Part shown: in pieces, positions 17,965-31,182 of the stretch
Numbering within the stretch: the first letter of the stretch is position 1
Layout: the number at the start of each line of letters is the position of its first letter
Virus record (IMG/VR): IMGVR_UViG_3300031576_000001
Span: 1 to 64,000 of that record
Reading direction: 5' to 3' (one strand)
DNA length: 64,000 bases
Notes under the pieces: generated by a model
Databases searched by the model: none
The model's input: the letters and a program-made list of their open reading frames with translations, nothing else
Told to the model about the DNA's origin: nothing
Translations under genes and position numbers: made by a program

Positions 17965-18387
17965 ATGACCCCCACCGAAGTCAAGCCTGTTAACGTCATC
18001 CACCTCTACAAGGGTACTTACATCGAGTGCTTCCTCGTCCGCGAGGCTTACGCCCGCAGCGGCAACGCTCACAACCCCACCAAGGTTTACAGCTACGCTG
18101 TAAAGGACTGGGAGGGTGGCACGGTGTACATCACCAGCACGTTGCGTGCCGCTAAGGCTTTCATCGACGACGTTGTTTTACACATGACTCGACCTTACGT
18201 TGTCTTCTACGACCTGTTTTTTTCAGGTCCGTACAGCCTGACCGTCGAGGCTGACTCCAAAGAGCACGCCCTAGAGGTAGCCCGCGCTGAGGTAGCTCGG
18301 TCAGGCGTAGGCTACGGCGGGAACCTCAAAGAGGACTCTTTCAGGGTAGGTAAAAAGCTGCCCCCCAGGAAGCTCAAGAAACCATGA
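17965..18387 (+). CDS. Hypothetical protein
   Basis: Start reassigned to the ATG directly after the ECF-type promoter. Confidence 0.65.
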   Translation: MTPTEVKPVNVIHLYKGTYIECFLVREAYARSGNAHNPTKVYSYAVKDWEGGTVYITSTLRAAKAFIDDVVLHMTRPYVVFYDLFFSGPYSLTVEADSKEHALEVARAEVARSGVGYGGNLKEDSFRVGKKLPPRKLKKP

Positions 18388-18992
18388 CGCCCAAGACGAG
18401 AACCCTAGTCAAGCGGGCGCTCATCCGTGACGCCCTTACCCGTGCTCCCCCCGGGGAGCACTTCACCCTAGCCTCTGGGGTACAAACAGACACCTACTGC
18501 GACGTGAAGAAAGCCGCACTTCACAGCGAGACCATGCTGCACCTGGCAGCCCTCCTCGTTAAAGAGTTCCTCCCCGTGGTACCCGACTGTACGGCGCTGG
18601 CGGGCGTATCTCTAGGGGGGTGTCACCTGGCAAGCAGTACGGCAATGTATGCCAAGGTTCACTACGTGGGTGCCTTTGAAGTACTCTACATGCGCAAGGA
18701 AACTAAGGGCTACGGTACCAAGAGCCGGGTCGAGGCGCCGTGCTCCCTTCTTAAAGGAGGGAGGGTGGTTCTCCTAGAGGACGTGGTGACCACGGGGGAC
18801 TCTGTCCTGTCCGCGGCTGACGCCCTTACCCAAGAGGGCTTCAGCGTAAAACTCGTTCTCTCCGTGGTGGACCGGCGCCCCTGGTTTGAGCACTACCTCG
18901 GGGGTGGAAAGTACCCCTACCGGGCTCTTTTCGCGCTGGACGAGCTACTTGCGGACGATTTGTCAGGCAACGCCCCTCAAGAGGGTGTATAG
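18384..18992 (+). CDS. pyrE: Orotate phosphoribosyltransferase
   Basis: FTLASG...YCD, RKETKGYG, PRPP-binding loop VVLLEDVVTTGDS, VVDR. Confidence 0.9.
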   Translation: MTPKTRTLVKRALIRDALTRAPPGEHFTLASGVQTDTYCDVKKAALHSETMLHLAALLVKEFLPVVPDCTALAGVSLGGCHLASSTAMYAKVHYVGAFEVLYMRKETKGYGTKSRVEAPCSLLKGGRVVLLEDVVTTGDSVLSAADALTQEGFSVKLVLSVVDRRPWFEHYLGGGKYPYRALFALDELLADDLSGNAPQEGV

Positions 18993-19037
18993 GTCCGCAG
19001 TCGCCTTGGTGTTGCGGTCAGCGCCAGTGTGACCCAT

Positions 19038-19180
19038 GGGAAGGTAGCTCAGGTCAGAAGAGCACCGGAACGAAAGCACTCTCAAAAAAACATCCTCCCG
19101 GCTCGCGCTGGGACGGTCAAACTGAGGGTTACTTCACCATAAACCGTTGGTCGGTGGTGCAAATCCACCCCTTCCCACCC
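19038..19180 (+). ncRNA. tRNA(CAT)-Y-RNA hybrid 1 (bulged-helix module inserted in the anticodon loop)
   Basis: Acceptor GGGAAGG/CCTTCCC, D arm, T arm GGTGG-TGCAAAT-CCACC; insert CACTCTC..CATCCTCCC-loop-GGGACGGTCA..GAGGGTTACTTC placed before CATAA. Confidence 0.75.
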
Positions 19181-19207
19181 AACTTGACTTTCTCATCAGT
19201 ACACACG

Positions 19208-19285
19208 GGTTCCTTCATCTAAACGGACTAGGAGACCCTTGCTAACGCGAGGAGGATGTACGTTCAAATCGTACAGGAACCACTA
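19208..19285 (+). ncRNA. tRNA-like RNA with an extended anticodon stem closed by a TAAC tetraloop
   Basis: Acceptor GGTTCCT/AGGAACC, T arm GTACG-TTCAAAT-CGTAC; CTTGC-TAAC-GCGAG replaces the 7-nt loop. Confidence 0.65.
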
Positions 19286-19286
19286 A

Positions 19287-19356
19287 GGCGGGCAGTCAAC
19301 CGGCAAGGGTTACTTCACCACTAACGAAAAACACCTTTGCCACCACACCTCCCGCC
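19287..19356 (+). ncRNA. Minimal Y-RNA-like RNA
   Basis: GGCGGG-C-AG-TCA..GGCAAGGGTTACTTC..GAA..CCTTTGCC..CT-CCCGCC. Confidence 0.75.
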
Positions 19357-19363
19357 TACTTAT

Positions 19364-19494
19364 TGCAGTGTAGCTCGACGGTAGAGCACGCATGACGCCC
19401 TGAGCGTCAACCTCCCCAGCTAACGCCGGGGCAGTCATTGCATAGGGTTACTCCCATAAGCAGGACGAGGCGGGGCGTAGTCCCTCCACTGCAA
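19364..19494 (+). ncRNA. tRNA(CAT)-Y-RNA hybrid 2
   Basis: Acceptor TGCAGTG/CACTGCA, D arm TAGCTCGACGGTAGAGC; insert AACCTCCCC-loop-GGGGCAGTCA..TAGGGTTACTCC placed before CATAA; degenerate T loop. Confidence 0.7.
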
Positions 19495-19515
19495 CTTCTA
19501 CGACTTTCAGCCGCG

Positions 19516-19541
19516 AACCTCTCTCAACCAGGAGCAGTCAC
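19516..19541 (+). promoter_or_regulatory. Y-motif-like bulged hairpin covering the Shine-Dalgarno of the Ro60 gene
   Basis: AAC-CT-CTCT-caacca-GGAG-C-AG-TCA-C-ATG has the same geometry as the ncRNA motif. Confidence 0.5.
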
Positions 19542-21101
19542 ATGGGCCAATCCAAGTCGCACAAGAACTTCATGGCGGGCACGAGCTACACAGTCTCGCC
19601 CCTACTCACCCTTCGTATCGCAGCGGCGTCGTGCTTCTTCGGGGAGCCCACGTTCTACGGAGCCAAGGACAGCAAGCCGGTCGCGCCCTCCCAGCAACCC
19701 CAAGCGGTACAGAAGCACCTGAGTGTAACCCTCGGGGGTCTGGGGCAACCTGACTTCTCGGGGCTCACGCCCTCTCAGCGCATGGAGAAGGTCATTGACA
19801 ACGCGCTCGACGCGGACCCCGAGGCTACCCTCCAAGAGGCGGTTCTGCTCCGTAAGCAGGGTCACATTCGTACCACGCCCCAGGTCATCATGGTCCGGGC
19901 GGCGCGTCACCCCAAGGTGAGGGGCACGGGGCTCATCCGGCAGTACGCACCCAACATCCTGTCCAGGGGGGATGAGTCAGCGGTACAACTCAAGTACCTC
20001 AGCAACCTAACGGGCAAGGGGCCCATCCCCAACGCCCTCAAGAAGGCGTGGGCTGCTCACCTCTCGGGCATGAATGAGTACACGCTGGCCAAATACGCCA
20101 AGGACGGGCTGACCGACGTGGCGAACGTGTGTCACCCCGCAGGCAACCCTCTCTTGGAGAAGCTGGTCAAGGGCAAGCTCTCTCAGGGGGGCTCGACTTG
20201 GGAAGCCATCGTGAGCAAGGATGGCTCGACCAAGGAGGCATGGTCCAAGGCGGTCTCCGTCATGGGGCACATGGCGCTCCTACGCAACCTGCGCAACTTC
20301 CACGAGAAGGGCGTAGACCCCGCCGTCTACCTGGACAAGCTGGTGAACACCGCCAAGGACGGCAAGCAATTGCCGTTCCGCTACTGGTCCGCTTACAACG
20401 CCCTATCCGAGGGGAGCGCTACCACGCGGCAAGCCATCGAGGAGTGCTTGAAGAACTCGCTGGGTTTCCTGCCCTTCTTCAAGGGTAAGGTCGCGTCCCT
20501 CTGCGACAACTCAGGTTCCGCGGTGTCTGCCCGGGTGTCGTGCATGAGCGACGTGAACGTGGCGACCATTGCCAACCTCTCGGCGCTTCTCACGGGCTAC
20601 CAGTCGGACGAGGGCTGGGTCGGGCTCTTTGGGGACCGGCTTACGATGCGCCAGGTGGACCGCAGCAAGGCGCCCCTGGCTCAGCTTGCCGCTCTGAACG
20701 TGCTGGGTAAGCAGGTAGGCGGCTACACGGAGAACGGGATTTGGCTCTTCTGGGACGAGGCGATCCGCACCAAGAAGCACTGGGATCACGTTTTTGTCTA
20801 CAGCGACATGCAAGCCGGTCACGGTGACTTGTACGGCTCAGACCCGAGCCAATACAAGGCTTTCCAGTGGGTTCAGAACCCCAGCCACATTGACGTGGCT
20901 CGTCTCATCGGAGCCTACCGCGCCAGCGTGAACCCGAAGGTCAACGTGTTCCTGGTTCAGTGCGCGGGCTACGCAGACGCGATCCTGCCCGAGGAGTACT
21001 ACCGCACCAGCATCCTCGGCGGCTGGGGTGACGGTATCTTCCACTACGCGGACCAGATGACCCGTCTCTTTGACGGTCTGGACGCTTCGCAAGCAACTTG
21101 A
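19542..21101 (+). CDS. Ro60/Rsr-like TROVE-domain RNA-binding protein with a C-terminal vWA domain
   Basis: FFGEPTFY, YTLAKY, TWEAIVS, MGHMALLRNLRN, KQLPFRYWSAY, MIDAS-like DNSGS, VYSDMQ. Confidence 0.93.
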   Translation: MGQSKSHKNFMAGTSYTVSPLLTLRIAAASCFFGEPTFYGAKDSKPVAPSQQPQAVQKHLSVTLGGLGQPDFSGLTPSQRMEKVIDNALDADPEATLQEAVLLRKQGHIRTTPQVIMVRAARHPKVRGTGLIRQYAPNILSRGDESAVQLKYLSNLTGKGPIPNALKKAWAAHLSGMNEYTLAKYAKDGLTDVANVCHPAGNPLLEKLVKGKLSQGGSTWEAIVSKDGSTKEAWSKAVSVMGHMALLRNLRNFHEKGVDPAVYLDKLVNTAKDGKQLPFRYWSAYNALSEGSATTRQAIEECLKNSLGFLPFFKGKVASLCDNSGSAVSARVSCMSDVNVATIANLSALLTGYQSDEGWVGLFGDRLTMRQVDRSKAPLAQLAALNVLGKQVGGYTENGIWLFWDEAIRTKKHWDHVFVYSDMQAGHGDLYGSDPSQYKAFQWVQNPSHIDVARLIGAYRASVNPKVNVFLVQCAGYADAILPEEYYRTSILGGWGDGIFHYADQMTRLFDGLDASQAT

Positions 21102-22555: not shown

Positions 22556-22628
22556 CCGCGCAAATCCTTGGTGGTCTAGGTACCTGTCTGATATACAGGC
22601 GATGGGAGTTCGACTCTTCCTGCGCGGA
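22556..22628 (+). tRNA. tRNA-Ile(GAT)
   Basis: CCTGT-CTGATAT-ACAGG. Confidence 0.8.
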
Positions 22629-22630
22629 CT

Positions 22631-22703
22631 GTGGCCGGTGGTTGCATGGTGCGACCGTCTAACTGTGAATTAGACTTCAGAGGGTTCGATTCCCTTCGGT
22701 CAC
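22631..22703 (+). tRNA. tRNA-His(GTG)
   Basis: TCTAA-CTGTGAA-TTAGA. Confidence 0.8.
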
Positions 22704-22929
22704 TCTGGCGTGCCTAGGGCACGTCTTACGCTTTCCGTTCCGGCTTGAAAGTCTTGGGCTGCGCGCGTACACCCAAGAGGAGTAGAGAGAGGGAGACTCT
22801 AACCAGATTGATCCTCTGGTGTACATCTGAAAAGAGGGGAGACCTGTGTGCGAGTCACAGGGAGGGCACTAGTCGAGAGCAGTGTTGAATGGTTCAGCGA
22901 GGGAGAGGATGCCCGACTGCCCGACGAAT

Positions 22930-23001
22930 TCCGAGGTTGTCAACGGTAGGGCGACCACACTGTTACTGTGGTGTTTGCAGGTCCGACTCCTGCCCTCGGA
23001 G
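22930..23001 (+). tRNA. tRNA-Asn(GTT)
   Basis: CCACA-CTGTTAC-TGTGG. Confidence 0.75.
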
Positions 23002-23303
23002 CCCGGTACGCGGAAGGGGTAAGCGATGCCTCTTCGTGCGTGCCTGAGATTACGTGCTCTAGTTCAACGCTAGAACAACGTCACTGGCTCGTCGTGGGCC
23101 GGCGTGTAGATGCAACGCACGGTGTGCTCCGCGCTAGCCTTTGGTTAGTTGCACAGACTACCCTTTGGTTTGACACCCAAAGGTGGCCCGTCTTGGACAA
23201 GACAGGGGTATCTCACCCCTCGGAGTCCCATGAGGATGACGAAATCAGAACCGGCGGAGGCTGTGTTTACACGGTCGAAGAAACCGGGGACGGAGAGAAC
23301 TAT

Positions 23304-23376
23304 GCCACCCAAGCACATCTGGTGATTGCAGTCCCCTGAAGAGGGAAACGGCCCGGTTCGATCCCGGGGGGTGGCA
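23304..23376 (+). tRNA. tRNA-Phe(GAA)
   Basis: TCCC-CTGAAGA-GGGA. Confidence 0.8.
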
Positions 23377-23449
23377 CTACGGGCGACAAGACTTGTGGTT
23401 CGAGTCCACACTGATTCTTCTGAGAGACGAAGGGTCGGGTAACGGATAA

Positions 23450-23523
23450 CAGCGTGAAGTCTTATGGCGAGACGCCAGTTCGGGGAACTGGAGATCGGAG
23501 GTTCAATTCCTCTCACGCTGACC
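23450..23523 (+). tRNA. tRNA-Pro(GGG)
   Basis: CCAGT-TCGGGGA-ACTGG. Confidence 0.75.
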
Positions 23524-23597
23524 GCGGAAGAGTGGCACGGTTCCATAGCTGGCTCATACCCAGAATACATTCAGTTCAACTCTGATTTCCGCCACCA
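23523..23597 (+). tRNA. tRNA-Met(CAT)
   Basis: CTGG-CTCATAC-CCAG; encoded CCA end. Confidence 0.75.
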
Positions 23598-23607
23598 GTG
23601 AAGACAT

Positions 23608-23684
23608 TGCGGCGTGGAGCAGCCTGGAAGCTCGCAAGGCTCATAACCTTGAGGTCGTCGGTTCAAATCCGACCGCTCGCGACA
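23608..23684 (+). tRNA. tRNA-fMet-like (CAT)
   Basis: GTGGAGCAGCCTGGAAGCTCG...CTCATAA...GGTCGTCGGTTCAAATCCG is close to bacterial initiator tRNA. Confidence 0.85.
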
Positions 23685-23685
23685 A

Positions 23686-23790
23686 AGAGTGTAGTCAAAG
23701 AAGAGGGTTACTTCCTCTAGTAAGAGAAACCTGACGGTTCGATTCCGTCCCGGCGTGGTCGCCATACACTCTCTTCGTTCATCTCACTCT
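23686..23790 (+). ncRNA. YrlA-like Y RNA with an internal T arm
   Basis: AGAGTG-T-AG-TCA..GAAGAGGGTTACTTC..GACGG-TTCGATT-CCGTC..CTCTCTTC..CT-CACTCT. Confidence 0.8.
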
Positions 23791-23793
23791 CTA

Positions 23794-23867
23794 TCCTCGG
23801 TAGCTCAAGTGAAGAGCACCTCCTGTTTACAGGGGTTGATGCTAGGTTCGATGCCTAGCCCTTGGGC
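23794..23867 (+). ncRNA. tRNA-like RNA with an expanded anticodon arm (CTG-TTTA-CAG)
   Basis: Canonical D and T arms; imperfect acceptor stem. Confidence 0.55.
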
Positions 23868-23917
23868 AATCCGTGATGGGGCAACTCGGGCAACAGGGTA
23901 CCCAGCACGGTCGTATT

Positions 23918-23986
23918 GTGCAAGAGTCAAGGCGACAACGTGGTTTCCAAATCCACGGAAGGTGGGTTCGATTCCTCCCTTGCACG
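23918..23986 (+). tRNA. tRNA-Trp(CCA)
   Basis: CGTGG(T)-TTCCAAA-(T)CCACG. Confidence 0.65.
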
Positions 23987-23988
23987 CT

Positions 23989-24088
23989 AGGTGTAGTCAA
24001 GCCCAGAGGTTCATCATACAATAGATGCTGGCTCCCTTGCGAGAGCCAGCACCCCGTACCAAACCACCTCTTGGTAACAATCTCACCT
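23989..24088 (+). ncRNA. Y-RNA-like RNA
   Basis: AGGTG-T-AG-TCA..AGAGGTTCATC..internal hairpin..ACCTCT..CT-CACCT. Confidence 0.7.
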
Positions 24089-24093
24089 TTTCT

Positions 24094-24113
24094 GGCGTCG
24101 TGGCTCAGTGGTT
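24094..24113 (+). pseudogene. 5' fragment of a tRNA disrupted by the HNH insertion
   Basis: GGCGTCGTGGCTCAGTGGTT ends at the HNH promoter. Confidence 0.55.
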
Positions 24114-24134
24114 GGGCCGGTGTATGCACATCTT

Positions 24135-24500
24135 ATGGCTGAATCAGAGCTTGTGACTTGTTGTGGTAAGACAATACAAAAGAGGCACCTCAAGACGCAC
24201 TTGAGGCTCAAGCACAAAGACTTCTCTCTCATACGTAGGGACTCAACACGGAGAGAGCGCCTTATTGTTGAGAGGGGGCATCGTTGTCAGGTGTGTGGCA
24301 TGTCTGAATGGATGGGCGTCAACATACCCATTGAGCTTGACCATACTGATGGCAATTGTGAAAACAATACGAGGGAGAACTTGAGGCTAATATGCCCCAA
24401 TTGCCATGCCCAAACTCCGACCTATCGGGGTAAGAATATGGGTAAAAGTGGGCATACCAAGCGAGCGACTATACTGAAGAAGTATGGTAGTTATCGTTGA
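24135..24500 (+). CDS. HNH homing endonuclease
   Basis: CQVC...ELDHTDGNCENNTRENLRLICPNCHAQT; lower GC; GGTGTA 10 nt upstream. Confidence 0.9.
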   Translation: MAESELVTCCGKTIQKRHLKTHLRLKHKDFSLIRRDSTRRERLIVERGHRCQVCGMSEWMGVNIPIELDHTDGNCENNTRENLRLICPNCHAQTPTYRGKNMGKSGHTKRATILKKYGSYR

Positions 24501-24503
24501 TTC

Positions 24504-24574
24504 GGTGCCGTAGCTTGAAGGTCAAGCCAGGAGCTTTTAACTCTTAGTTGAGGGTTCGATTCCCTCCGGCGCCA
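24504..24574 (+). tRNA. tRNA-Lys(TTT)
   Basis: AGGAG-CTTTTAA-CTCTT. Confidence 0.8.
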
Positions 24575-24632
24575 CGAGGCTCGGGATACTTTTTGCAGCC
24601 TGCAATAGTGTTCACAACCTGAGCCTTACTAG

Positions 24633-24706
24633 GGGAGTCTAGTTGGTCTGGTGACCGCGCTTGCTTCATAAGCAAGTTTAGAAGGGTTCGATCCCCTTGG
24701 CTCCTA
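24633..24706 (+). tRNA. tRNA-Met/Ile2(CAT)
   Basis: CTTGC-TTCATAA-GCAAG. Confidence 0.7.
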
Positions 24707-24834
24707 CGAGCTGAACCTGCGAGGGTCCGGCTAATTTGCCCTGGCGACGGGGTAGGGGTTGCCCCGAGAGTGTCTTGGTACACAACGGCGGCGTTGATGG
24801 TTCAGCCTCAGACTCGACCCATGGGGCATTACAA

Positions 24835-24905
24835 GGGGTTATCGTCCAAAGGCAGGACGGCAGATTTGCATTCTGCAAATTTCGGTTCGAGTCCGAATTA
24901 CTCCA
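24835..24905 (+). tRNA. tRNA-Cys(GCA)
   Basis: GCAGA-TTTGCAT-TCTGC arm. The loop can also be read with TGC central, so the anticodon call is tentative. Confidence 0.6.
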
Positions 24906-24913
24906 CGACAGAT

Positions 24914-24986
24914 CAGGGAGAAGCCCTATGGTGGGGCGCCAGTTTCGGGAACTGGAACTTCGCGAGTTCAATTCTCGCCTCCCTGA
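24914..24986 (+). tRNA. tRNA-Pro(CGG)
   Basis: CCAGT-TTCGGGA-ACTGG. Confidence 0.8.
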
Positions 24987-25063
24987 CTATGGGTGCGTCT
25001 CTTAGGACGCCAGGGTCGCCTGGTACCTTGACACACCCGTTACGTGACTTACCGTCACGTTTC

Positions 25064-25153
25064 GCCCTGGTAGCTCAACTACGAGAGCGCCCCTGTAGTG
25101 TCCCCAGGGACCAACAGGGGAGGTTGGAGGTGCAAATCCTTCCCCGGGCCCCA
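25064..25153 (+). ncRNA. tRNA-like RNA whose anticodon arm is replaced by a long hairpin; CCA end
   Basis: CCCCTGT..GTCCC-CA-GGGAC..ACAGGGG lies between normal D and T arms. Confidence 0.65.
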
Positions 25154-25158
25154 TGTTT

Positions 25159-25233
25159 GCCAACGTAGCCCAACTAGGTAGAGGCAACTGCCCGAGGCGC
25201 AGTACAGTGAGAGTCCGAATCTCTTCGTTGGTA
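25159..25233 (+). tRNA. tRNA-Leu(GAG), short variable arm
   Basis: ACTGC-CCGAGGC-GCAGT. Confidence 0.7.
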
Positions 25234-25243
25234 CTTGATAAAG

Positions 25244-25314
25244 CGTGCTGTTTCCCTTGGAGGGTGGGCGGTCTTCTAAACCGCTACGTGTGTGTTCAAT
25301 TCTCACCAGCACGA
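25244..25314 (+). tRNA. tRNA-Arg(TCT)
   Basis: GCGGT-CTTCTAA-ACCGC. Confidence 0.7.
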
Positions 25315-25317
25315 CAA

Positions 25318-25389
25318 TGCGTGGGCGTCCCGGGGACAACAGAGGCTTTGACCCTCTGGAAAAAGGTTCGACTCCTTTCTCGCGTACCA
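25318..25389 (+). tRNA. tRNA-Gln(TTG)
   Basis: AGAGG-CTTTGAC-CCTCT; CCA end. Confidence 0.75.
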
Positions 25390-25452
25390 AGGTGTAGTCA
25401 CTCAGAGGGTTACTTCGGCAAGAACAGGCACCCTCTAAACTCTATCTCACCT
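25390..25452 (+). ncRNA. Minimal Y-RNA-like RNA
   Basis: AGGTG-T-AG-TCA..AGAGGGTTACTTC-GGCAA-GAA..ACCCTCT..CT-CACCT. Confidence 0.75.
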
Positions 25453-25458
25453 TCCAAT

Positions 25459-25529
25459 GGAACCGTAGCTCTAAGGCAGAGCACGACGCTCTTAACGTCA
25501 GGGTCAGGGTTCGATTCCCTGTGGTTCCA
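25459..25529 (+). tRNA. tRNA-Lys(CTT)
   Basis: GACG-CTCTTAA-CGTC. Confidence 0.8.
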
Positions 25530-25612
25530 CGATAGGAGCAGTCACTTGAGTAGGCAGGTGAGAGCAGACGTGCTTAGGGTCGCCAGACGCAACCCTCTGT
25601 TTTTGCTTACAA

Positions 25613-25688
25613 CGCGCAAACGTCTCTGGTGGGGCAAACAGCCTGACGTGCTGTTCTTGGACGGGTTCGATTCCCTCTTGCGTGACCA
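25613..25688 (+). tRNA. tRNA-Val(GAC)
   Basis: ACAGC-CTGACGT-GCTGT; CCA end. Confidence 0.7.
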
Positions 25689-25724
25689 GCGTAAAGCCCT
25701 ATGGTGGGGCGCTTGCTTTGGGTA
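25687..25724 (+). pseudogene. 5' half of tRNA-Pro(TGG) truncated at the anticodon loop by the HNH insertion
   Basis: CAGCGTAAAGCCCTATGGTGGGGCGCTTGCTTTGGGT has the same D arm as tRNA-Pro(CGG) at 24914. Confidence 0.7.
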
Positions 25725-25761
25725 CGTGGCACGCTCCTGTGCGTTCAGTCATACTAACTGC

Positions 25762-26208
25762 GTGAGTACCAGCAAGTGCTTCAAGTGTAAGTTGACCCTA
25801 CCTACAAGCGAGTTTTCCATTCGCCCCAACGGGAAGCCTACGAGCTACTGTAAAACTTGCCAACGGAGTGCATCTAAAGCCCACTACCAAGCAAACAAGA
25901 CAGCGCACAATCAACGGCGTTGGGCAAGTATTATAAAGTATCGTGATAACGTGACTTCTCACGTTATAAAGATCAAAGAAGGTAGTCCGTGTGTGGACTG
26001 CCACGAGTACCACCCGTACTGGGCTATGGACTTTGACCACCGCGACCCCGCAAACAAAGAGTTCTGTATAGGGCAAGCGGTAAACTTTGGCTACTCACTT
26101 AGTCGTGTGGACGCAGAGATCGCAAAGTGCGACCTTGTTTGCGCGCTGTGCCACAGGTACAGAACTTACGGTCAGCGCAGAAACTTCCGGGTTGTAGCCA
26201 AAAGGTGA
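25762..26208 (+). CDS. HNH-family homing endonuclease
   Basis: CFKC..CKTC zinc finger; CVDC...MDFDHRDP..K...EIAKCDLVCALCHR. Confidence 0.85.
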   Translation: MSTSKCFKCKLTLPTSEFSIRPNGKPTSYCKTCQRSASKAHYQANKTAHNQRRWASIIKYRDNVTSHVIKIKEGSPCVDCHEYHPYWAMDFDHRDPANKEFCIGQAVNFGYSLSRVDAEIAKCDLVCALCHRYRTYGQRRNFRVVAKR

Positions 26209-26259
26209 GGCACCTGTTTTGGGAACAGGTTAATGGCAGTTCGAGTCTGCTCAACCCGA
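26188..26259 (+). tRNA. tRNA-Pro(TGG)
   Basis: CCTGT-TTTGGGA-ACAGG; overlaps the HNH stop codon. Confidence 0.8.
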
Positions 26260-26271
26260 CTTACTATAGTA

Positions 26272-26335
26272 CAGCGTGTGCTCATGGTTACGGGAGTACA
26301 GGAACCAGGGGGTCCGATTCCCTCTACGCTGACCA
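26272..26335 (+). ncRNA. 64-nt truncated tRNA-like RNA (acceptor and T arm, CCA end, single middle hairpin)
   Basis: CAGCGTG/TACGCTG-ACCA; GGGGG-TCCGATT-CCCTC. Confidence 0.55.
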
Positions 26336-26447
26336 GGGTGCCTTTGCTAGTGGAGTGACCTCCCCCAACTCCAACCTCTGCTAGTGACTGCGCGCCCTAT
26401 TCTATACACATTAGGCTGGAACCCATCATTTCAGTCTAATGAGCTAA

Positions 26448-26520
26448 CCCGTTGAAGTCCTCTGGTGGGGACACCACATTGTCAATGTGGCCTTGGCGAG
26501 TTCAATTCTCGTCAGCGGGA
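26448..26520 (+). tRNA. tRNA-Asp(GTC)
   Basis: CCACA-TTGTCAA-TGTGG. Confidence 0.75.
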
Positions 26521-26676
26521 CTACCTGTACCCAACAGTCTCTTCCTACACGCTACTCTACTTCCTGGTTCGATTCCAGGGCACTGCACCTCACGGACAGC
26601 AGAGCTAGCCTAACGGTAAAGGCATTCGTTTTACCAACGGACACTCAACGGAGAGGCAACTCGGGCACGGTAACAT

Positions 26677-26756
26677 GCAGACGTGGTGTAACGGTAGCCA
26701 CGGTGGTCTTAGAAGCCACTGCCTAAAGCGTAGGGGTTCGACTCCCCTCGTCTGCA
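26677..26756 (+). tRNA. tRNA-Leu(TAG)
   Basis: GTGGT-CTTAGAA-GCCAC; variable arm present. Confidence 0.85.
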
Positions 26757-26781
26757 CAAGCCATCGGTGTAAGGTATTCAC

Positions 26782-27210
26782 ATGCAAGCTCTAGCGCTCA
26801 TCGTTTCCGTAGTGGCAGCCTTGGTTGTCATGGCGTTCGTTTCTGAGTCGGGTTCGAGGCTCCGCACGTTTAGTTTGGGGTGCCTCATGGCTCTCGGGGG
26901 CGTTCTCTTCTACGCCCTGCTCACGGTGTACCCCTTCATGGTGGGGTGGAACTGGCTCATGCCGGGGGTCTTTGGGTTGAAGACTCTGGACTTCTGGCAA
27001 GCCTTGGTGCTCATCCTCCTGGCGGGTGTGTTGTTCCACTCTGGGGCTGTTAGCACCAAGAGCGACTTAGGGTTTGTTAGACACAACCCCCTCTTTGCAA
27101 AGAGGGAACACGCTAACGTATTCCAACGGCAGAGAAAGCGGCCTCAGATACCGCAAAGTGTGGGTTCGAGTCCCACCGTTAGCACTGTGAGTCTGTTGGA
27201 AGACTACTAG
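26782..27210 (+). CDS. Small membrane protein
   Basis: Three hydrophobic segments; WNWLMPGVFGLKTLDFWQAL; GGTGTA 10 nt upstream; 3' end runs over a tRNA. Confidence 0.65.
   Translation: MQALALIVSVVAALVVMAFVSESGSRLRTFSLGCLMALGGVLFYALLTVYPFMVGWNWLMPGVFGLKTLDFWQALVLILLAGVLFHSGAVSTKSDLGFVRHNPLFAKREHANVFQRQRKRPQIPQSVGSSPTVSTVSLLEDY
27112..27184 (+). tRNA. tRNA-Leu(CAG), short variable arm
   Basis: GCGG(C)-CTCAGAT-(A)CCGC. Confidence 0.75.
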
Positions 27211-27302
27211 AAAGCAAGACCATTTGGGGGCGTGTATCCCGCATGCTCCCCCCCTCAGATCAAAACCAAAGCAAGGTGGTCCCCGGATAGAGTTTTCCTT
27301 CT

Positions 27303-27378
27303 GCTCCCGTCGTCTAAAGGTAGGTACACTGGGTTCTCAACCCAGAAATGGCGAGTTCAATTCTCCCCGGGAGTACCA
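27303..27378 (+). tRNA. tRNA-Glu(CTC)
   Basis: CTGGG-TTCTCAA-CCCAG; CCA end. Confidence 0.85.
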
Positions 27379-27388
27379 CACACAACTT

Positions 27389-27463
27389 GTCTCCGATGCT
27401 CAATGGAAGGGCGCGTGTCTACGGAACACGTATTTGAGAGTTCGAGTCTCTCCGGGGATGCCA
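27389..27463 (+). tRNA. tRNA-Arg(ACG)
   Basis: CGTGT-CTACGGA-ACACG; CCA end. Confidence 0.85.
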
Positions 27464-27470
27464 GACACAA

Positions 27471-27542
27471 GCCCTTACGGTGCGATGGACGCACACGACC
27501 CTCCGAAGGTCGTCCGTGTCGGTTCGATTCCGACTAGGGGCT
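27471..27542 (+). tRNA. tRNA-Arg(CCG)
   Basis: CGACC-CTCCGAA-GGTCG. Confidence 0.8.
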
Positions 27543-27588
27543 CTCTGCGGTGTATGTCAGCATTGGTTGGCAATACTCTTTCAGTCTT

Positions 27589-27675
27589 GGAACTTGACGG
27601 CTCAATGGTGAGGCCACTAGTCTTGAAAACTAGCTACACCCGAGAGGGTGAGGGGTTCGATTCCTCCTGGTTCCT
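27589..27675 (+). tRNA. tRNA-Ser(TGA)
   Basis: CTAGT-CTTGAAA-ACTAG; long variable arm. Confidence 0.85.
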
Positions 27676-27684
27676 CTGTGTGTT

Positions 27685-27770
27685 GGAAGGCAGAGCCTCA
27701 TGGTGAGGCGCGAGCGTGCTAAGCTCGGTCTAGTCCTCTTGGGACTGTGGTTCGATTCCACTACCTTCCG
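27685..27770 (+). tRNA. tRNA-Ser(GCT)
   Basis: CGAGC-GTGCTAA-GCTCG; long variable arm. Confidence 0.8.
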
Positions 27771-27773
27771 CAA

Positions 27774-27857
27774 GTGCGTAGTCACGAGAGACGGTTACTT
27801 CAACAAAACTGGTGAAATTACCCCCGCAAGGGGGACCGTAGCTCAACAATCTCGCAT
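27774..27857 (+). ncRNA. Y-RNA-like RNA
   Basis: GTGCG-T-AG-TCA..GACGGTTACTTC..GAA..CCCC-GCAA-GGGG..ACCGT..CT-CGCAT. Confidence 0.75.
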
Positions 27858-27865
27858 GATTCTAC

Positions 27866-27941
27866 GCTAGCGTAGCCCAACTAGGCAGAGGCAGCGCACT
27901 CAAAACGCGCAAAGGTGAGGGTCCGAGTCCCTCGGCTAGCA
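27866..27941 (+). tRNA. tRNA-Leu(CAA), short variable arm
   Basis: GCGC(A)-CTCAAAA-(C)GCGC. Confidence 0.75.
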
Positions 27942-27989
27942 CTCAAGACCACAGAGAGGGTGTCTTGTAGACGTACTCGCTCTGGTTTA

Positions 27990-28061
27990 GCTCCCATCGA
28001 CTACTGGCTAGGTTATCGGTTTTTCACACCGAGGGACGGAGATCGATACTCCGTGGGAGCA
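27990..28061 (+). tRNA. tRNA-Glu(TTC)
   Basis: TCGGT-TTTTCAC-ACCGA. Confidence 0.8.
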
Positions 28062-28066
28062 CTTTT

Positions 28067-28139
28067 GCCACGCTAGTCCTCTGGGGAGGGCGCTTGCTTT
28101 ACACGCAAGATTAGCAGGGTTCGATCCCCTGGCGTGGTA
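28067..28139 (+). tRNA. tRNA-Val(TAC)
   Basis: CTTGC-TTTACAC-GCAAG. Confidence 0.8.
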
Positions 28140-28182
28140 CCGAGAGGGGGGCACGGTGTTCCTGTGTAACTCTCTCGACTCT

Positions 28183-28255
28183 GGGTTCTGAGCCGCAAAG
28201 TGTGGCAGTGTGACTGTTAATCCACCGAAGCTGGGCGCGATTCCCAGAGAGCCCT
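28183..28255 (+). tRNA. tRNA-Asn(GTT), divergent
   Basis: Anticodon loop CTGTTAA; GGGTTCT/AGAGCCC acceptor. Confidence 0.6.
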
Positions 28256-28264
28256 CTGGTTACT

Positions 28265-28359
28265 GGTCCTTAAGTTGTACCCCCCTTGGTAACCCAAGCG
28301 TGGGGAGGGGACGCTTGCTGTAGTAGGCAAGGCAGGTTCGACCCCTGCGGGACCAACCA
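28265..28359 (+). ncRNA. Atypical tRNA-like RNA with an elongated D region; CCA end
   Basis: TGGTCCT/GGGACCA-ACCA; GCAGG-TTCGACC-CCTGC. Confidence 0.55.
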
Positions 28360-28366
28360 CTTTCAA

Positions 28367-28431
28367 TCCCAGGTCGTCTAAGGGTAAGGCGATTGACTTT
28401 GACTCGATGTCCCTGTGGGTTCGAGTCCCTC
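28367..28431 (+). pseudogene. tRNA-Gln(TTG) lacking the 3' acceptor strand
   Basis: ATTGA-CTTTGAC-TCGAT and the T arm are present, but there is no CCTGGGA; it abuts the HNH. Confidence 0.6.
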
Positions 28432-29122
28432 TACTCCTACTCGTTCCCGGTTTGCTTCGTAAGTGCGAACCCATTGGCGTATACAGTTATCAGAGACGCC
28501 GTACTTGACCCCGACTGCCACGAAAGAGGACTCCTCTATGTCTTTTTTCAGTGTATCAAAAGTAGGTCTAACCACCTTGCGTCTATGGAATTGTGGCTCT
28601 CTATTAGTGAAGAAGCATTTTCTACCACAGTACTTCTTCCCTAGTGGTGCTTGGTTGAAACATCTTTTGCTGGCGCACTTGGACCTCCTACGTTTACCGC
28701 AATGGGTGGGGAGCGTAGCGTTACAATTTGGGCATACAATGCGTAGGTTCTCCAACCTGTGGTCATTACGCACCCCATTGATCTGATCCAAGATTAGGGC
28801 CATTTTACATCCATTCCAAATCTCGCCTTGACCACAAAGCTCACACTCTCGTCTTTAGGCCCTCCTTGTACAACCTCTCCTTAATGTGTGTTGTGGTGTA
28901 CTTGCTCCCTTCTACAAGTATTTGTTCTATGGGGGCCGCAACAGGAATACAATTTCTCGTCCCGAAGTGAGACGTGTCTGCTCCTAGAGATTCGTAGTGT
29001 TCACGGACTTTCACTCTTGTCTTCATGCAACCCCTAGCAAATCCTAGCCGGTACATAACGTCTGAGAGAGACGAAGCAGCAGCTACTACTTTCAACAAGT
29101 CCTCGTCTGTGTATCGTGCCAT
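28378..29122 (-). pseudogene. Degenerate HNH homing endonuclease (frameshift near 28845; catalytic His apparently replaced by Gln)
   Basis: LKTRV* continues in another frame as ECELCGQGEIWNG...LILDQING..NDHRLENLRIVCPNC. Confidence 0.75.
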
Positions 29123-29136
29123 GTGTGCAGTATTAG

Positions 29137-29207
29137 TCCCGGTTCGTCTAACGGCAAGACAATTCGCTCTGAACGAAAGAACAGTGGTTCGATTCCATTA
29201 CCGGGAA
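29137..29207 (+). tRNA. tRNA-Gln(CTG)
   Basis: TTCG-CTCTGAA-CGAA. Confidence 0.85.
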
Positions 29208-29284
29208 CCGAGACCAGACCTCTCCTTCTACGAGGGGTCGGTGAGCTTTGGTGGCGCGTCACAGTGGCTTGCCAGGTCTCTCTT

Positions 29285-29355
29285 GGGGTTGTAAGTCAAC
29301 GGGAGACTGGTGCCCTTGCAAGGCACAAATGAGGGTTCGATTCCCTCCGACTCCA
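29285..29355 (+). tRNA. tRNA-Ala(TGC)
   Basis: GTGCC-CTTGCAA-GGCAC; G3-U70 pair. Confidence 0.85.
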
Positions 29356-29362
29356 CTAGTGC

Positions 29363-29433
29363 GCTGTGCTCGTCTAACGGTAAGCCGCCACATTGGTATT
29401 GTGGGAATTCGGGTTCAACTCCCGGGCACAGCT
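29363..29433 (+). tRNA. tRNA-Thr(GGT)
   Basis: CCACA-TTGGTAT-TGTGG. Confidence 0.85.
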
Positions 29434-29439
29434 CTCTTT

Positions 29440-29511
29440 GCGACATTGAGCCAAAGGCTGGTTACGACCTTGCCAAGGTCGGTTATGGGGGTTCGAGTCC
29501 CCCATGTCGCT
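29440..29511 (+). tRNA. tRNA-Gly(GCC)
   Basis: CGACC-TTGCCAA-GGTCG. Confidence 0.8.
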
Positions 29512-29512
29512 C

Positions 29513-29629
29513 AGGTCTCTGGCAGAAGCCAAGACACGCCAGGATTCTAGACACTTCTGGCGTGTCTCCGGTGGAAATTGCGCCCCCGTAGCTACGGGGT
29601 GTATACTGGTTCAAATCCAGTGGGGCCTA
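29513..29629 (+). ncRNA. tRNA-like RNA with two long non-canonical arms
   Basis: GGTCTC/GGGGCC acceptor; AGACACGCCAG/CTGGCGTGTCT stem; ACTGG-TTCAAAT-CCAGT T arm. Confidence 0.6.
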
Positions 29630-29634
29630 CTAAT

Positions 29635-29705
29635 GCGGCTCTCGTTCAAAGGCAGGATGAGAGTTTTCCAAACTCATGATCAGGGTTCGATTCCCTGGAG
29701 CCGCA
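29635..29705 (+). tRNA. tRNA-Gly(TCC)
   Basis: GAGT-TTTCCAA-ACTC. Confidence 0.8.
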
Positions 29706-29841
29706 CTCCATGAAACGTGCTCTCTTTTCATCGTGCAAAGGCCCTGCAAACCACAGCAACAAGGCTTGTGTCTGTGGGGCGCACTCTCGCAAGGCGCGTG
29801 ATAAGCGTCTACGGTGGTCCAGGGCGCGGGTTGTATCTGAA

Positions 29842-29913
29842 GGGGTTGTAGTCCAACGGAAAGACGCAGCGTCGGCAACGCTGAAATAGCGGGTTCGATT
29901 CCCCTCTACTCCA
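29842..29913 (+). tRNA. tRNA-Ala(GGC)
   Basis: CAGCG-TCGGCAA-CGCTG; G3-U70 pair. Confidence 0.75.
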
Positions 29914-30099
29914 CAACACAGGCGCACCAAAGTACACGGGGCGTGTGTGCAGTCCGTAAAGGCAGTAGGTAGGAGACTACTCATGTTCCTGCCCTGACGC
30001 GTTGGTACTCCGTACCTAACCAGGGTGTTGGCCCGTTCAATTCGGGTCTAGGGGGAGCGTGGACGTGTGGTGTAGGGCAGCACAGTACGGGCGAGTTTT

Positions 30100-30172
30100 T
30101 GACGTGGCGTCAAGGCTGACACAGCCGTCTGCAAAACGGCTTGACTATGGGGTTCGAGTCCCCTCTACGTCT
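30100..30172 (+). tRNA. tRNA-Cys(GCA)
   Basis: GCCGT-CTGCAAA-ACGGC. Confidence 0.75.
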
Positions 30173-30176
30173 CTCT

Positions 30177-30254
30177 GGGCATGGTCAGCGATTACTCAAA
30201 GTAAGGGAAGTCCTAAATCGCGTGGAGAGGGTGCGACTCCCTCCTTGTCCACCA
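30177..30254 (+). ncRNA. Atypical tRNA-like RNA with a CCA end
   Basis: GAGGG-TGCGACT-CCCTC T arm; ACCA end; no canonical anticodon arm. Confidence 0.5.
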
Positions 30255-30255
30255 C

Positions 30256-30633
30256 GGGGATGAATTGGCTTCGATCAGGGCTAAGCATTCTCACTCGCAG
30301 GCGCGCTTTTCCTGGCCGTAGCGCTAAAAGAAGCTGGGGACCGACAACTGCCAACGACAACGTTGAAGCTGCTCCTCTCGCCCTCGCGGCGTTAGGTGGT
30401 TGGGGTGGGCTAGATACCCTTAGTAACCCCCTCGACTCAAAAGTGACCAAGGGTGCGCTGCCCGACGACGCGCTGTAAGAGTAGGGTGGCTAAGAGCGAG
30501 TTTACAGACATGGCCAGGCGTGACCTTGGAAACCCACCTCTCAGGGGAGACTGTAGAGAGGAAAGCCTGTAAACATAGAGAGTGGGCGATCTTTACTCTG
30601 AGACCGCGGGATCGAACCCGCGCATCTCCACCA
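30256..30633 (+). ncRNA. ssrA: tmRNA
   Basis: GGGGATG..GGCTTCGA 5' end, CATCTCC-ACCA 3' end with G3-U70, T arm, and tag frame ANDNVEAAPLALAA from 30350. Confidence 0.95.
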
Positions 30634-30729
30634 ACTGTTTCGTAATTATGCGAAACGCCCCGTCACCTAGAGACCTTGTTTGGCAGTCGGTACCCGCGTT
30701 CCGACTCTCTTGGTGGCGGGTACCCTTTT

Positions 30730-30800
30730 GCCCCTGTAGCTCAATAGAAGAGCAGTAGCCTTGTAACCTACCGACGACGGTGCAATCCCGTCCTGGGGCT
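30730..30800 (+). tRNA. tRNA-Thr(TGT)
   Basis: GTAG(C)-CTTGTAA-(C)CTAC. Confidence 0.8.
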
Positions 30801-30808
30801 CTCAGAAT

Positions 30809-30880
30809 GGACTGCGACGGTCTGGTTGACCTGCGACAGCTTATATCTGTTTTGTCAGGGTTCAATTCCCTGGCAGTCCA
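30809..30880 (+). tRNA. tRNA-Ile(TAT)
   Basis: ACAG-CTTATAT-CTGT. Confidence 0.75.
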
Positions 30881-31182
30881 CTGTGCTCGTTTGGTTGTGA
30901 GGTCACGGTTGAAAGCACCGGAGTAGCTACCGGTTGAGTAAGCCGTGCCAGTAACAACCTGACTGTCGTGAACGTGACGATGGTTTAGTTGCCCCTCTTC
31001 GATGGGAGGTGTGCGGATCGAAGACGAGCACTTTTCTCGCTGTGCTAGTTCAAAAAGAAGAACTGCGGTCCCGTACCCCGCTAATGACAGTGCAAGTCTG
31101 TCGCACAGCTCCAAGGGTGAGCGTATCGACAATCACCTACAGGTACACCCCGCGAAGATCGCGTAGTGTGTGCGGTAAAGAA

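What the first reader, a model, noticed from the sequence alone, without database searches (positions are those of the whole stretch)
19516..19544. The Ro60 ribosome-binding site is folded into a copy of the Y-RNA helix: possible autogenous translational control
Seen: directly before the ATG, AAC-CT-CTCT-caacca-GGAG-C-AG-TCA-C-ATG reproduces the permuted motif (compare AAC-CT-CCCC-loop-GGGG-C-AG-TCA in hybrid 2). The Shine-Dalgarno GGAG forms one strand of the helix. Inference: free Ro60 could bind its own mRNA and block initiation, with the Y RNAs titrating it. The stem is only about 6 bp, so chance is not excluded.
Basis: inference. Interest (0 to 1): 0.7.

Follow-up and report, generated by a model that had tools for sequence, protein, structure and literature searches.

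The report
Y-RNA look-alike hairpin at Ro60 start
The ribosome-binding site of this jumbo phage's Ro60 gene sits in a small bulged hairpin that copies the most conserved helix of the neighbouring Y RNAs. The same hairpin recurs in front of distantly related Ro60 genes of phages and myxobacteria, so it is probably a feedback switch, though no binding has been tested.

Summary
The leader at 19516-19541 reads AAC-CT-CTCT-caacca-GGAG-C-AG-TCA-C, followed by the ATG. It repeats the capped bulged helix of the tRNA/Y hybrid at 19409-19437, and the Shine-Dalgarno GGAG is one strand of the stem.

The hairpin is weak on its own (-2.1 kcal/mol; no more stable than shuffles). Comparative data show it is not chance:
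- The motif CT-stem-loop-stem'-N-AG-T(G/C)A ends 4-25 nt before the start codon in 18 of 75 clusters (70% identity) of this TROVE subfamily. About 2.4 are expected.
- It occurs in at least 15 deep lineages whose proteins are only about 50% identical.
- The stems covary (CTCT/GGAG, CCTT/AAGG, CTGC/GCAG, CTGGCA/TGCCAG, CGCCCGC/GCGGGCG), and a compensatory CC/GG variant replaces CT/AG.
- A covariance model built from relatives alone places its best hit in the whole 64-kb window exactly on the leader.
- N-AG-UGA is also the most conserved 5' motif of the family's Y RNAs.

The protein model matches only Ro60 structures.

The most likely reading is an operator that mimics the Y RNA and is bound by Ro60, with Y RNAs as competitors. 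That Ro60 binds this helix is inferred, not shown. The motif Chen et al. proposed as the contact in YrlA maps to a different part of these Y RNAs.

The parts
19516..19518 (+). 5' flank AAC of the leader hairpin. It corresponds to the 3'-side internal-loop nucleotides of the Y-RNA lower helix.
   Evidence: Sequence. Same AAC at 19409-19411 in hybrid 2. Y RNAs of relatives have (A/G/T)TT before CT.
19519..19524 (+). 5' strand of the leader helix: CT + CTCT.
19525..19530 (+). Loop caacca.
   Evidence: The loop of the sister locus L141 also starts CAACC.
19531..19537 (+). 3' strand GGAG-C-AG. GGAG is the Shine-Dalgarno; C 19535 is the single bulged base; AG pairs with CT.
   Evidence: N-AG-T(G/C)A is the top conserved 5' motif of the family's Y RNAs.
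19538..19541 (+). 3' flank TCA (internal-loop equivalent) plus one base before the start codon.
   Evidence: All three Y modules of the window have TCA after the bulged helix. The sister locus L141 has TCA in both its hybrid and its leader. Most other lineages have TGA in both.
19542..21101 (+). Ro60-type gene (TROVE plus vWA ring protein, 519 aa; P0001).
   Evidence: Pfam TROVE 2e-10. PDB sequence hit to the phiLo Ro60, 1e-10. AF2 model with pLDDT 84 matches only Ro60 structures over the full length.
19409..19437 (+). Capped ('permuted') lower helix of Y module C, inside the tRNA-like scaffold 19367-19494. This is the template the leader copies.
   Evidence: Second-best hit of model R1 in the window.
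19094..19119 (+). Capped lower helix of Y module A, inside the tRNA-like scaffold 19039-19180: CC-TCCCGGC-tcgc-GCTGGGA-C-GG-TCA. It is the compensatory CC/GG form of the CT/AG step.
   Evidence: The same CC/GG variant is enriched in relatives' leaders.
19287..19356 (+). Linear Y RNA module B: GGCGGG-C-AG-TCA, upper stem GGCAAGGG/CCTTTGCC, loop TTACTTC..., then CAC-CT-CCCGCC.
19208..19284 (+). tRNA-like element (T arm GTACG-TTCAAAT-CGTAC; acceptor GGGTTCC/GGAACC) that precedes module B.
   Evidence: Not called by ARAGORN.

Best explanation
The leader of the Ro60 mRNA carries a translational operator that mimics the lower helix of the phage's own Y RNAs. That helix is a stem, a one-base bulge, an A-U/G-C step (AG/CU), and UCA/AAC flanks. 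In this phage the Shine-Dalgarno GGAG is one strand of the helix and the start codon lies 5 nt after it.

Proposed mechanism:
- Ro60 that is not occupied by Y RNA binds this weak hairpin, stabilises it, and blocks 30S binding.
- The three Y modules encoded immediately upstream carry the same helix. No terminator-like site is found between them and the gene, so they are probably on the same transcript. They compete for Ro60.
- Ro60 synthesis would therefore track the Y-RNA pool.

Shown: the element, its conservation and covariation across the subfamily, its identity with the Y-RNA helix, its position at the RBS, and the Ro60 fold of the protein.
Inferred: that Ro60 is the ligand, that binding represses rather than activates or stabilises, and that the Y RNAs and the gene are co-transcribed.
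For: (1) Element and match to hybrid 2 are as described.

(2) Conservation. The motif ends 30 nt or less before the start, with a stem of 4 or more, in 25 of 169 non-redundant homologous leaders. Dinucleotide shuffles give 2.7+-1.7, and 1.3% of background windows have it. With the T[GC]A flank, 18 of 170 have it against 0.6 expected. It is present in 18 of 75 70%-identity clusters (binomial 2e-11), spread over at least 15 deep lineages (tree).

(3) Covariation. The 5' strand matches its own 3' strand far better than those of other leaders: 34 against 14.9+-2.6, 0 of 2000 swaps. On alignment A4, 97.8% of cells are paired and the covariation score is 0.522 against 0.205+-0.041, 0 of 500 shuffles; slid controls give 48-69% paired. 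The compensatory CC/GG form of the CT/AG step is found 8 times against 1.4 expected, while control dinucleotides give 0.

(4) Same motif as the Y RNAs. Anchoring only on UAC(U/C)UC, AGUGA is the top upstream 5-mer (169 of 293) at a fixed 15-nt spacing, and the preceding bulge base is C>U>A>G. 241 candidate Y RNAs were found in 129 of 170 loci. Model R2 hits: 40 of the 41 with E<0.1 lie on the TROVE strand upstream of the gene. Those inspected are either leaders or capped lower helices of tRNA-like/Y hybrids.

(5) R2, trained without the window, ranks 19516-19540 first in the window.

(6) Lineage-specific flank. The flank is TCA in both the Y modules and the leader in the window and its sister L141, and TGA in both elsewhere.

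(7) The hairpin alone is too weak to act (-2.1 kcal/mol), which fits dependence on a protein.

(8) In leaders with a separate downstream SD the hairpin still lies next to it.

(9) The protein has a Ro60 fold. A phage Ro60 binding upstream-encoded Y-like RNAs has been shown for phiLo (PMC12135203).
Against: - No binding or expression data exist. Only the source DNA metagenome holds this sequence, and the complex prediction was not run for protein plus RNA.
- The Rfam YrlA model aligns its helix 1 and GNCGAA region, proposed as the Rsr contact (PMC4201824), to the upper stem and GGUUACUUC element of these Y RNAs, not to the lower helix. The leader never contains GGUUACUUC. Ro60 may therefore recognise the other element, and a different factor may bind the lower helix.
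- Only about a quarter of the subfamily's clusters have the motif. The Bacillota-type clade and the cultured phages G and SRB7757 lack it.
- N-AG-UGA resembles the extended SD GGAGGUGA.
- Leader stems sometimes resemble the stems of Y RNAs in the same locus (for example L105). Part of the apparent covariation may therefore come from local duplication or gene conversion rather than compensatory mutation.
- The leader alignments were selected with a pairing filter, which biases the pair counts.
Confidence: 0.5

Rival explanations
1. The conserved leader hairpin is recognised by a factor other than Ro60, one that also acts on the lower helix of the Y RNAs. Candidates are a processing or end-trimming nuclease, or another partner of the RNP. 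It would control cleavage or stability of the Ro60 mRNA, for example by separating it from the upstream Y-RNA/tRNA-like precursor, rather than acting through direct autorepression by Ro60.
For: The lower helix lies outside the Rfam YrlA model, and the proposed Rsr-contact motif maps to the other conserved element. The Y modules sit directly upstream with no terminator-like or sigma-70-like site between them and the gene. In many loci the last Y RNA ends 25-45 nt before the start. M. smegmatis YrlA is processed by RNase P (PMC4201824).
Against: No candidate factor is identified. The architecture (terminal helix, single bulged base that is mostly C, two further pairs, internal loop) is that of the vertebrate and Deinococcus Ro-binding helix (PMC4201824, plus my own recollection of the GGUC-C-GA/UU-GACU site). 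Placement over or next to the SD of the Ro60 gene itself is what an autogenous operator predicts.
Confidence: 0.25
2. The hairpin is an evolutionary by-product: a leftover junction between the 3' strand of the last Y unit and the 5' strand of a decayed duplicate in a tandem array. It has no regulatory role.
For: Junction hairpins of this kind form between adjacent Y units (L105 332-363). Leader stems can resemble the stems of Y RNAs in the same locus (L105; the window itself).
Against: The motif is retained at the same place, 4-25 nt before the start, in at least 15 lineages whose proteins have diverged to about 50% identity. In most loci the leader stem differs from the local Y stems (L028, L078). 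Neutral non-coding sequence would be randomised at this depth.
Confidence: 0.08
3. It is simply an extended Shine-Dalgarno (GGAGGUGA-like) with a nearby pyrimidine tract, or an SD-masking hairpin that acts by itself (for example as a thermosensor). The likeness to the Y helix would be coincidental.
For: GG-N-AG-UGA differs from GGAGGUGA mainly at one position. In class I leaders the motif sits at SD spacing, 4-8 nt before the start. The CC/GG variants read as a perfect AGGUGA.
Against: The A of AG is kept where the SD consensus has G, and N varies freely. About 13 leaders have a separate canonical SD downstream of the hairpin (L064, L075, L078, L105, L148). The 5' strand covaries with the 3' strand. 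The same model hits Y modules that are not ribosome-binding sites. Among 195 other SD-bearing starts of this phage, none has the motif. The hairpin is only -2.1 kcal/mol.
Confidence: 0.07
4. Chance resemblance in this one phage.
For: Short stem. No thermodynamic signal (z = +0.97). The generic pattern occurs 33 times in the genome.
Against: All the comparative results above. A model trained only on relatives ranks this site first in the window.
Confidence: 0.02

Closest known systems
Autogenous translational operators that mimic the protein's RNA ligand. Examples from established knowledge: the E. coli thrS operator mimicking the tRNA-Thr anticodon arm, and ribosomal-protein operators (L1, S8, L20, S15) mimicking rRNA sites.
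   Same: A small structured element at or next to the RBS of the gene for an RNA-binding protein that reproduces a helix of that protein's presumed natural RNA partner. The natural partner can compete.
   Different: No such operator has been reported for Ro60/TROVE genes in the library searched. Here binding and repression are untested, and the ligand identity is inferred.
CsrA/RsmA with CsrB-type decoy sRNAs (established knowledge).
   Same: A protein would bind a motif overlapping the SD, and highly expressed small RNAs carrying the same motif would titrate it. The protein's own leader would be among its targets.
   Different: CsrA recognises GGA in hairpin loops. Here the motif is a bulged helix. 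Only the protein's own gene carries it in this genome, so there is no sign of a regulon.
Phage operator hairpins at start sites: the MS2/Qbeta coat-protein operator on the replicase gene, and T4 RegA, gp32 and gp43 autoregulation (established knowledge).
   Same: A weak bulged hairpin at an initiation region that needs the protein to be stabilised.
   Different: Those operators are not copies of a separate non-coding RNA partner.
Y RNA / YrlA (Rfam RF02553; Chen et al. 2014, PMC4201824) and the phiLo Yrl1/Yrl2-Ro60 complex (PMC12135203).
   Same: The template of the mimic is a Y-RNA module encoded next to a Ro60 gene. Some relatives' Y RNAs give sub-threshold YrlA hits of 34-36 bits. tRNA-like T and D arms are present.
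   Different: The leader itself is not a Y RNA: it has no upper stem, no GGUUACUUC and no tRNA-like domain. The family's Y RNAs carry an extra conserved lower helix (N-AG-UGA / AUU-CU) that is not part of the Rfam model. They often occur in a form where the tRNA-like acceptor end is open and the Y stem is capped.

Membership tests
Autogenous translational operator by molecular mimicry | Lies within the ribosome-binding region of the gene that encodes the RNA-binding protein. | tested here: met
   The hairpin's 3' end is 5 nt from the ATG and the SD is inside the stem. In relatives it lies 4-25 nt before the start.
Autogenous translational operator by molecular mimicry | Reproduces the sequence and structure of the protein's cognate RNA site. 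| tested here: inconclusive
   It reproduces the conserved lower helix of the adjacent Y RNAs. Whether that helix is the Ro60 contact is unknown, because the YrlA GNCGAA region maps elsewhere.
Autogenous translational operator by molecular mimicry | Conserved, with compensatory changes, among homologous leaders. | tested here: met
Autogenous translational operator by molecular mimicry | The protein binds the operator and represses its own translation; the partner RNA relieves the repression. | not testable with these tools
   Complex prediction does not fold protein plus RNA. No RNA data are available.
Y RNA / YrlA (RF02553, RF00019) | Match to the Rfam covariance model. | tested here: not met
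   No Y_RNA or YrlA hit at E of 10 or less in 18900-19650. Only some relatives' long Y RNAs reach 34-36 bits against a gathering score of 69.
Y RNA / YrlA (RF02553, RF00019) | Terminal stem plus large loop or tRNA-like domain, encoded next to a TROVE gene. | tested here: not met
   The leader has only the lower helix. The neighbouring modules at 19039-19494 do have these features.
Ro60 protein family (for the gene product) | TROVE HEAT-repeat ring plus vWA domain with a MIDAS DxSxS motif. | tested here: met
   Pfam TROVE. D322-N-S-G-S326 is invariant. The AF2 model matches 9KOP, 1YVP, 2NVO and 9NEN over the full length, and no other fold matches at E<1e-3.
SD-sequestering hairpin acting alone / RNA thermometer | The SD is paired in a hairpin stable enough to block initiation, and this is conserved. 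| tested here: not met
   dG is -2.1 kcal/mol. In about a third of the carriers the SD lies outside the hairpin.
Intrinsic terminator / attenuator | GC-rich stem followed by a U run. | tested here: not met
   No terminator-like site in 18900-19650.

The most novel reading that the evidence does not exclude
A large, previously uncharacterised Ro60 (TROVE) subfamily, found in jumbo phages and in myxobacterial and other bacterial chromosomes, carries a dedicated cis-regulatory RNA class in its 5' leaders. This is a capped copy of the bulged Y-RNA helix through which Ro60 would sense its own free concentration, with the co-encoded Y RNAs acting as decoys. That would be the first feedback circuit described for any Ro60. 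It would also define, by natural minimisation, the minimal Ro60-binding helix of this subfamily.
Probability: 0.45. Interest if true: 0.8.

Novelty: new member of a known kind. Interest (0 to 1): 0.72.

Why it matters
How Ro60 levels are matched to Y RNA levels is not known in any organism. No autoregulation of Ro60 turned up in the papers searched. If this reading is right, a conserved Y-helix mimic at the RBS gives three things:
- A directly testable feedback model.
- A natural minimal binding site of about 20 nt for structural and biochemical work on bacterial and phage Ro60.
- A sequence signature (CU-stem-loop-stem'-N-AG-UGA before the start codon) that could be curated as a new cis-regulatory RNA family and used to annotate Ro60 loci.

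It also shows that phage and bacterial members share the regulatory element as well as the gene.

Tried and rejected
- Thermodynamic significance of the leader fold: none.
- Rfam at gathering and at E of 10 or less: no family on the leader or on the window's Y modules.
- ARAGORN: no tRNA called in 18900-19650.
- Near-identical or close relatives: none in the phage collection, and nothing above 55% identity among 5.8 billion proteins. Fine-scale covariation of this exact hairpin could therefore not be studied. The sister L141 is 55% identical.
- RNA-seq: only the source cave-metagenome DNA run holds the sequence.
- Complex prediction (Ro60 plus leader RNA): the job was counted but not folded. 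It is no evidence either way.
- Unpermuted mini-helices (stem-N-AG-loop-CT-stem') in leaders: not enriched as a class, 9 against 9.1 expected. L003 and the clade L005/L006/L118 do have clean examples just 5' of the SD.
- Cultured phages as test systems: Bacillus phage G and Nitratidesulfovibrio phage SRB7757 have plain SD leaders.
- The pattern hit at 46736-46755 is inside a CDS, so it is chance.
- My first pairing idea for the Y modules (AGTCAACC with GGTTACT) was dropped. The lower-helix/upper-stem model fits the MFE fold and the relatives.
- An RNA-level reading of AACTTCATG in codons 9-11 was dropped, because relatives conserve the peptide and not the bases.
- Two review articles could not be opened.

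Full report
**What the window is.** The window is the first 64 kb of a 322,633-bp IMG/VR virus record assembled from a cave metagenome. It carries 23 tRNA matches and a tmRNA gene. The ORF at 19542-21101 encodes a 519-aa protein with a partial Pfam TROVE match. Its only PDB sequence hit is the Ro60 of Thermus phage phiLo (1e-10). It has an invariant DNSGS MIDAS motif. An AlphaFold model (pLDDT 84) matches only Ro60 structures over its full length: 9KOP, 1YVP, 2I91, 2NVO and 9NEN. Calling it Ro60 is therefore justified at the fold level. It belongs to a divergent subfamily whose nearest members are at most 55% identical.

**The observation.** The bases are exactly as described: AAC(19516-18)-CT-CTCT-caacca-GGAG-C-AG-TCA(19538-40)-C-ATG(19542). 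The stem has six pairs and one bulged C. GGAG is at ideal Shine-Dalgarno spacing.

The 549-nt intergenic region upstream holds three Y-RNA modules:
- A linear module at 19287-19356, with lower helix GGCGGG-C-AG / CT-CCCGCC, internal loop TCA.../...CAC, upper stem GGCAAGGG/CCTTTGCC, and a loop starting TTACTTC.
- Two modules inside tRNA-like scaffolds (19039-19180 and 19367-19494), in which the lower helix is capped by a loop. These read CC-TCCCGGC-tcgc-GCTGGGA-C-GG-TCA at 19094-19119, and AAC-CT-CCCC-agctaacgcc-GGGG-C-AG-TCA at 19409-19437.

The leader is a copy of this capped lower helix without the upper stem and without TTACTTC.

**Is it more than chance in this genome?** Energetically it is not (z = +0.97; -2.1 kcal/mol). 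By pattern it is. The generic form occurs 33 times in 645 kb of both strands, but with a C bulge and the AAC flank it occurs only at hybrid 2 and at the leader. None of 194 other crude SD-bearing gene starts has it.

**Homologous leaders.** I fetched 220 loci from IMG/VR, metagenomes and GTDB genomes, which gave 169-170 non-redundant leaders. Many end in CT-stem-loop-stem'-N-AG-TGA followed by 1-25 nt and the start codon. Examples are L028 (CT-CCTT-cgagccga-AAGG-a-AG-TGA-aac-ATG), L078 (CT-CTGC-atttcc-GCAG-a-AG-TGA), L105 (CT-CTGGCA-tgg-TGCCAG-c-AG-TGA), L148 (CT-CGCCCGC-cgtc-GCGGGCG-c-AG-TG) and L141 (CT-CC-(19 nt)-GG-c-AG-TCA).

Enrichment:
- Stem of 4 or more: 25 of 169, against 2.7+-1.7 in shuffles and 1.3% of background windows.
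- With the T[GC]A flank: 18 of 170, against 0.6 expected.
- AGTGA within 31 nt of the start: 17 of 139, against 1.6 expected (7e-13).
- 18 of 75 70%-identity clusters carry the motif (2e-11), in at least 15 deep lineages of the tree. The Bacillota-type clade lacks it.

Covariation:
- The swap test gives 34 against 14.9+-2.6.
- On A4, 97.8% of cells are paired. Three of the six pairs change on both sides. The covariation score is 0.522 against 0.205 (0 of 500 shuffles), and slid controls are 48-69% paired.
- These alignments were chosen with a pairing filter, so the percentage paired is biased. The swap test and the model search are less so.
- The AG/CT step has a compensatory GG/CC form in eight leaders (1.4 expected). 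Control dinucleotides show nothing.

A covariance model built from 15 relatives, without the window, ranks 19516-19540 first in the whole window.

**Identity with the Y-RNA helix.** Anchoring only on UAC(U/C)UC upstream of TROVE genes, AGUGA is the top 5-mer (169 of 293) at a fixed 15-nt distance. The preceding base is C 117, U 34, A 14, G 3. The dinucleotide before UGA is AG in 166 cases. A structural scan finds 241 candidate Y RNAs in 129 of 170 loci, with the form stem-N-AG-UGA ... (A/G/U)UU-CU-stem'.

Model R2 run on 98 loci gives 41 hits at E<0.1, and 40 of them are on the TROVE strand upstream of the gene. Those inspected are either leaders or capped lower helices inside tRNA-like/Y hybrids, for example L064 ATT-CT-CCCC-gtga-GGGG-c-AG-CGA followed by an upper stem, GGTTACTTCC and a T arm. 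The capped ('permuted') form is therefore a normal form of the Y module in this family, not a peculiarity of this phage. The window and its sister L141 share the rarer TCA flank in both hybrid and leader.

**Mechanism.** The hairpin is too weak to mask the SD by itself. In about a third of the carriers a separate canonical SD follows the hairpin. The conserved property is a Y-like bulged helix placed within the 30S footprint, which is what a protein-bound operator predicts.

The obvious ligand is Ro60, for three reasons:
- The helix is the element shared by all Y modules next to these genes.
- Its architecture (terminal helix, single bulged base that is mostly C, two more pairs, internal loop) parallels the vertebrate and Deinococcus Ro site (PMC4201824; partly my own recollection).
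- The element sits on Ro60's own mRNA.

The Y modules upstream would compete. No terminator-like or sigma-70-like site separates them from the gene.

The main uncertainty is this. Rfam YrlA aligns, at sub-threshold score, so that its helix 1 and GNCGAA region correspond to the upper stem and GGUUACUUC element rather than to the lower helix. Ro60 might therefore contact that element, and another factor might read the lower helix. The direction of control (repression, stabilisation, or assembly in cis) is also only inferred.

**Known and new.** Y RNAs next to bacterial and phage Ro60 genes are known (PMC4201824), and a phage Ro60 binding upstream Y-like RNAs has been shown (PMC12135203). I found no report of Ro60 autoregulation or of a structured rsr leader; the library searched is incomplete. 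In concept the element belongs with the ThrRS and ribosomal-protein mimicry operators and with CsrA/CsrB-type titration. It would be a new member of that kind.

Noticed in passing
window 19039-19494: Three Y-RNA modules precede the Ro60 gene. Two are built into tRNA-like scaffolds in which the Y stem (upper stem, internal loop, bulged lower helix) replaces the anticodon arm and is capped by a loop, while the acceptor end is open. This is a circular permutation of the published YrlA layout. The same architecture recurs in relatives (for example L064 676-760, L141 840-935, L146, L149, L153).
   Followed up: partly
relatives L002-L220, upstream of the TROVE genes: The Y RNAs of this TROVE subfamily share a consensus not covered by Rfam: stem-N-AG-UGA, then about 10 nt, then (G)GUUACUUC ... 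(A/G)UU-CU-stem', with fixed 15-nt spacing. Only the long tRNA-like members give sub-threshold YrlA hits (34-36 bits against 69). This looks like an uncurated Y-RNA subfamily with an extra conserved lower helix.
   Followed up: partly
window 19296-19301, 19406-19411, 19523-19528: The hexamer TCAACC occurs three times within 230 nt: in module B after C-AG, before the helix of hybrid 2, and across the stem-loop boundary of the leader. The leader loop of the sister L141 also begins CAACC. AACC could pair with the GGUU of the GGGUUAC motif. Unexplained.
   Followed up: no
window 22557-31255: A dense array of 23 tRNA matches and a tmRNA gene (30256-30633) lies a few kb downstream of the Ro60 locus. 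tRNA genes also flank the Ro60/Y-RNA loci of relatives (L010, L028, L105).
   Followed up: no
L141-L201 (GTDB genomes): The same TROVE subfamily (49-55% identical) sits in chromosomes of cultured myxobacteria (Sorangium, Polyangium, Nannocystis, Paraliomyxa) and in Deinococcus xinjiangensis, so it is not confined to phages. Sorangium and Polyangium leaders carry other conserved hairpins before a strong SD that lack the AG/CU step.
   Followed up: partly
L109 720-760; L006/L050: In L109 the same hairpin plus SD plus ATG that precedes the TROVE gene in its sister L105 lies 216 nt upstream of the TROVE match, so something seems to be inserted after the start. In L006/L050 the TROVE match (1645 nt) is not one open frame of 300 aa or more.
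   Followed up: no
L003 2377-2401; L005, L006, L118 leaders: A few leaders carry the lower helix in the unpermuted order, closed on the internal-loop side, just 5' of the SD: GGCAG-c-AG-tgaacg-CT-CTGCC, and TTGA-N-AG-loop-CT-TCAA. As a class such hairpins are not enriched.
   Followed up: partly
window 18384-18992: The gene immediately upstream of the Y-RNA cluster encodes a phosphoribosyltransferase-domain protein (Pfam PF00156, 8e-07).
   Followed up: no
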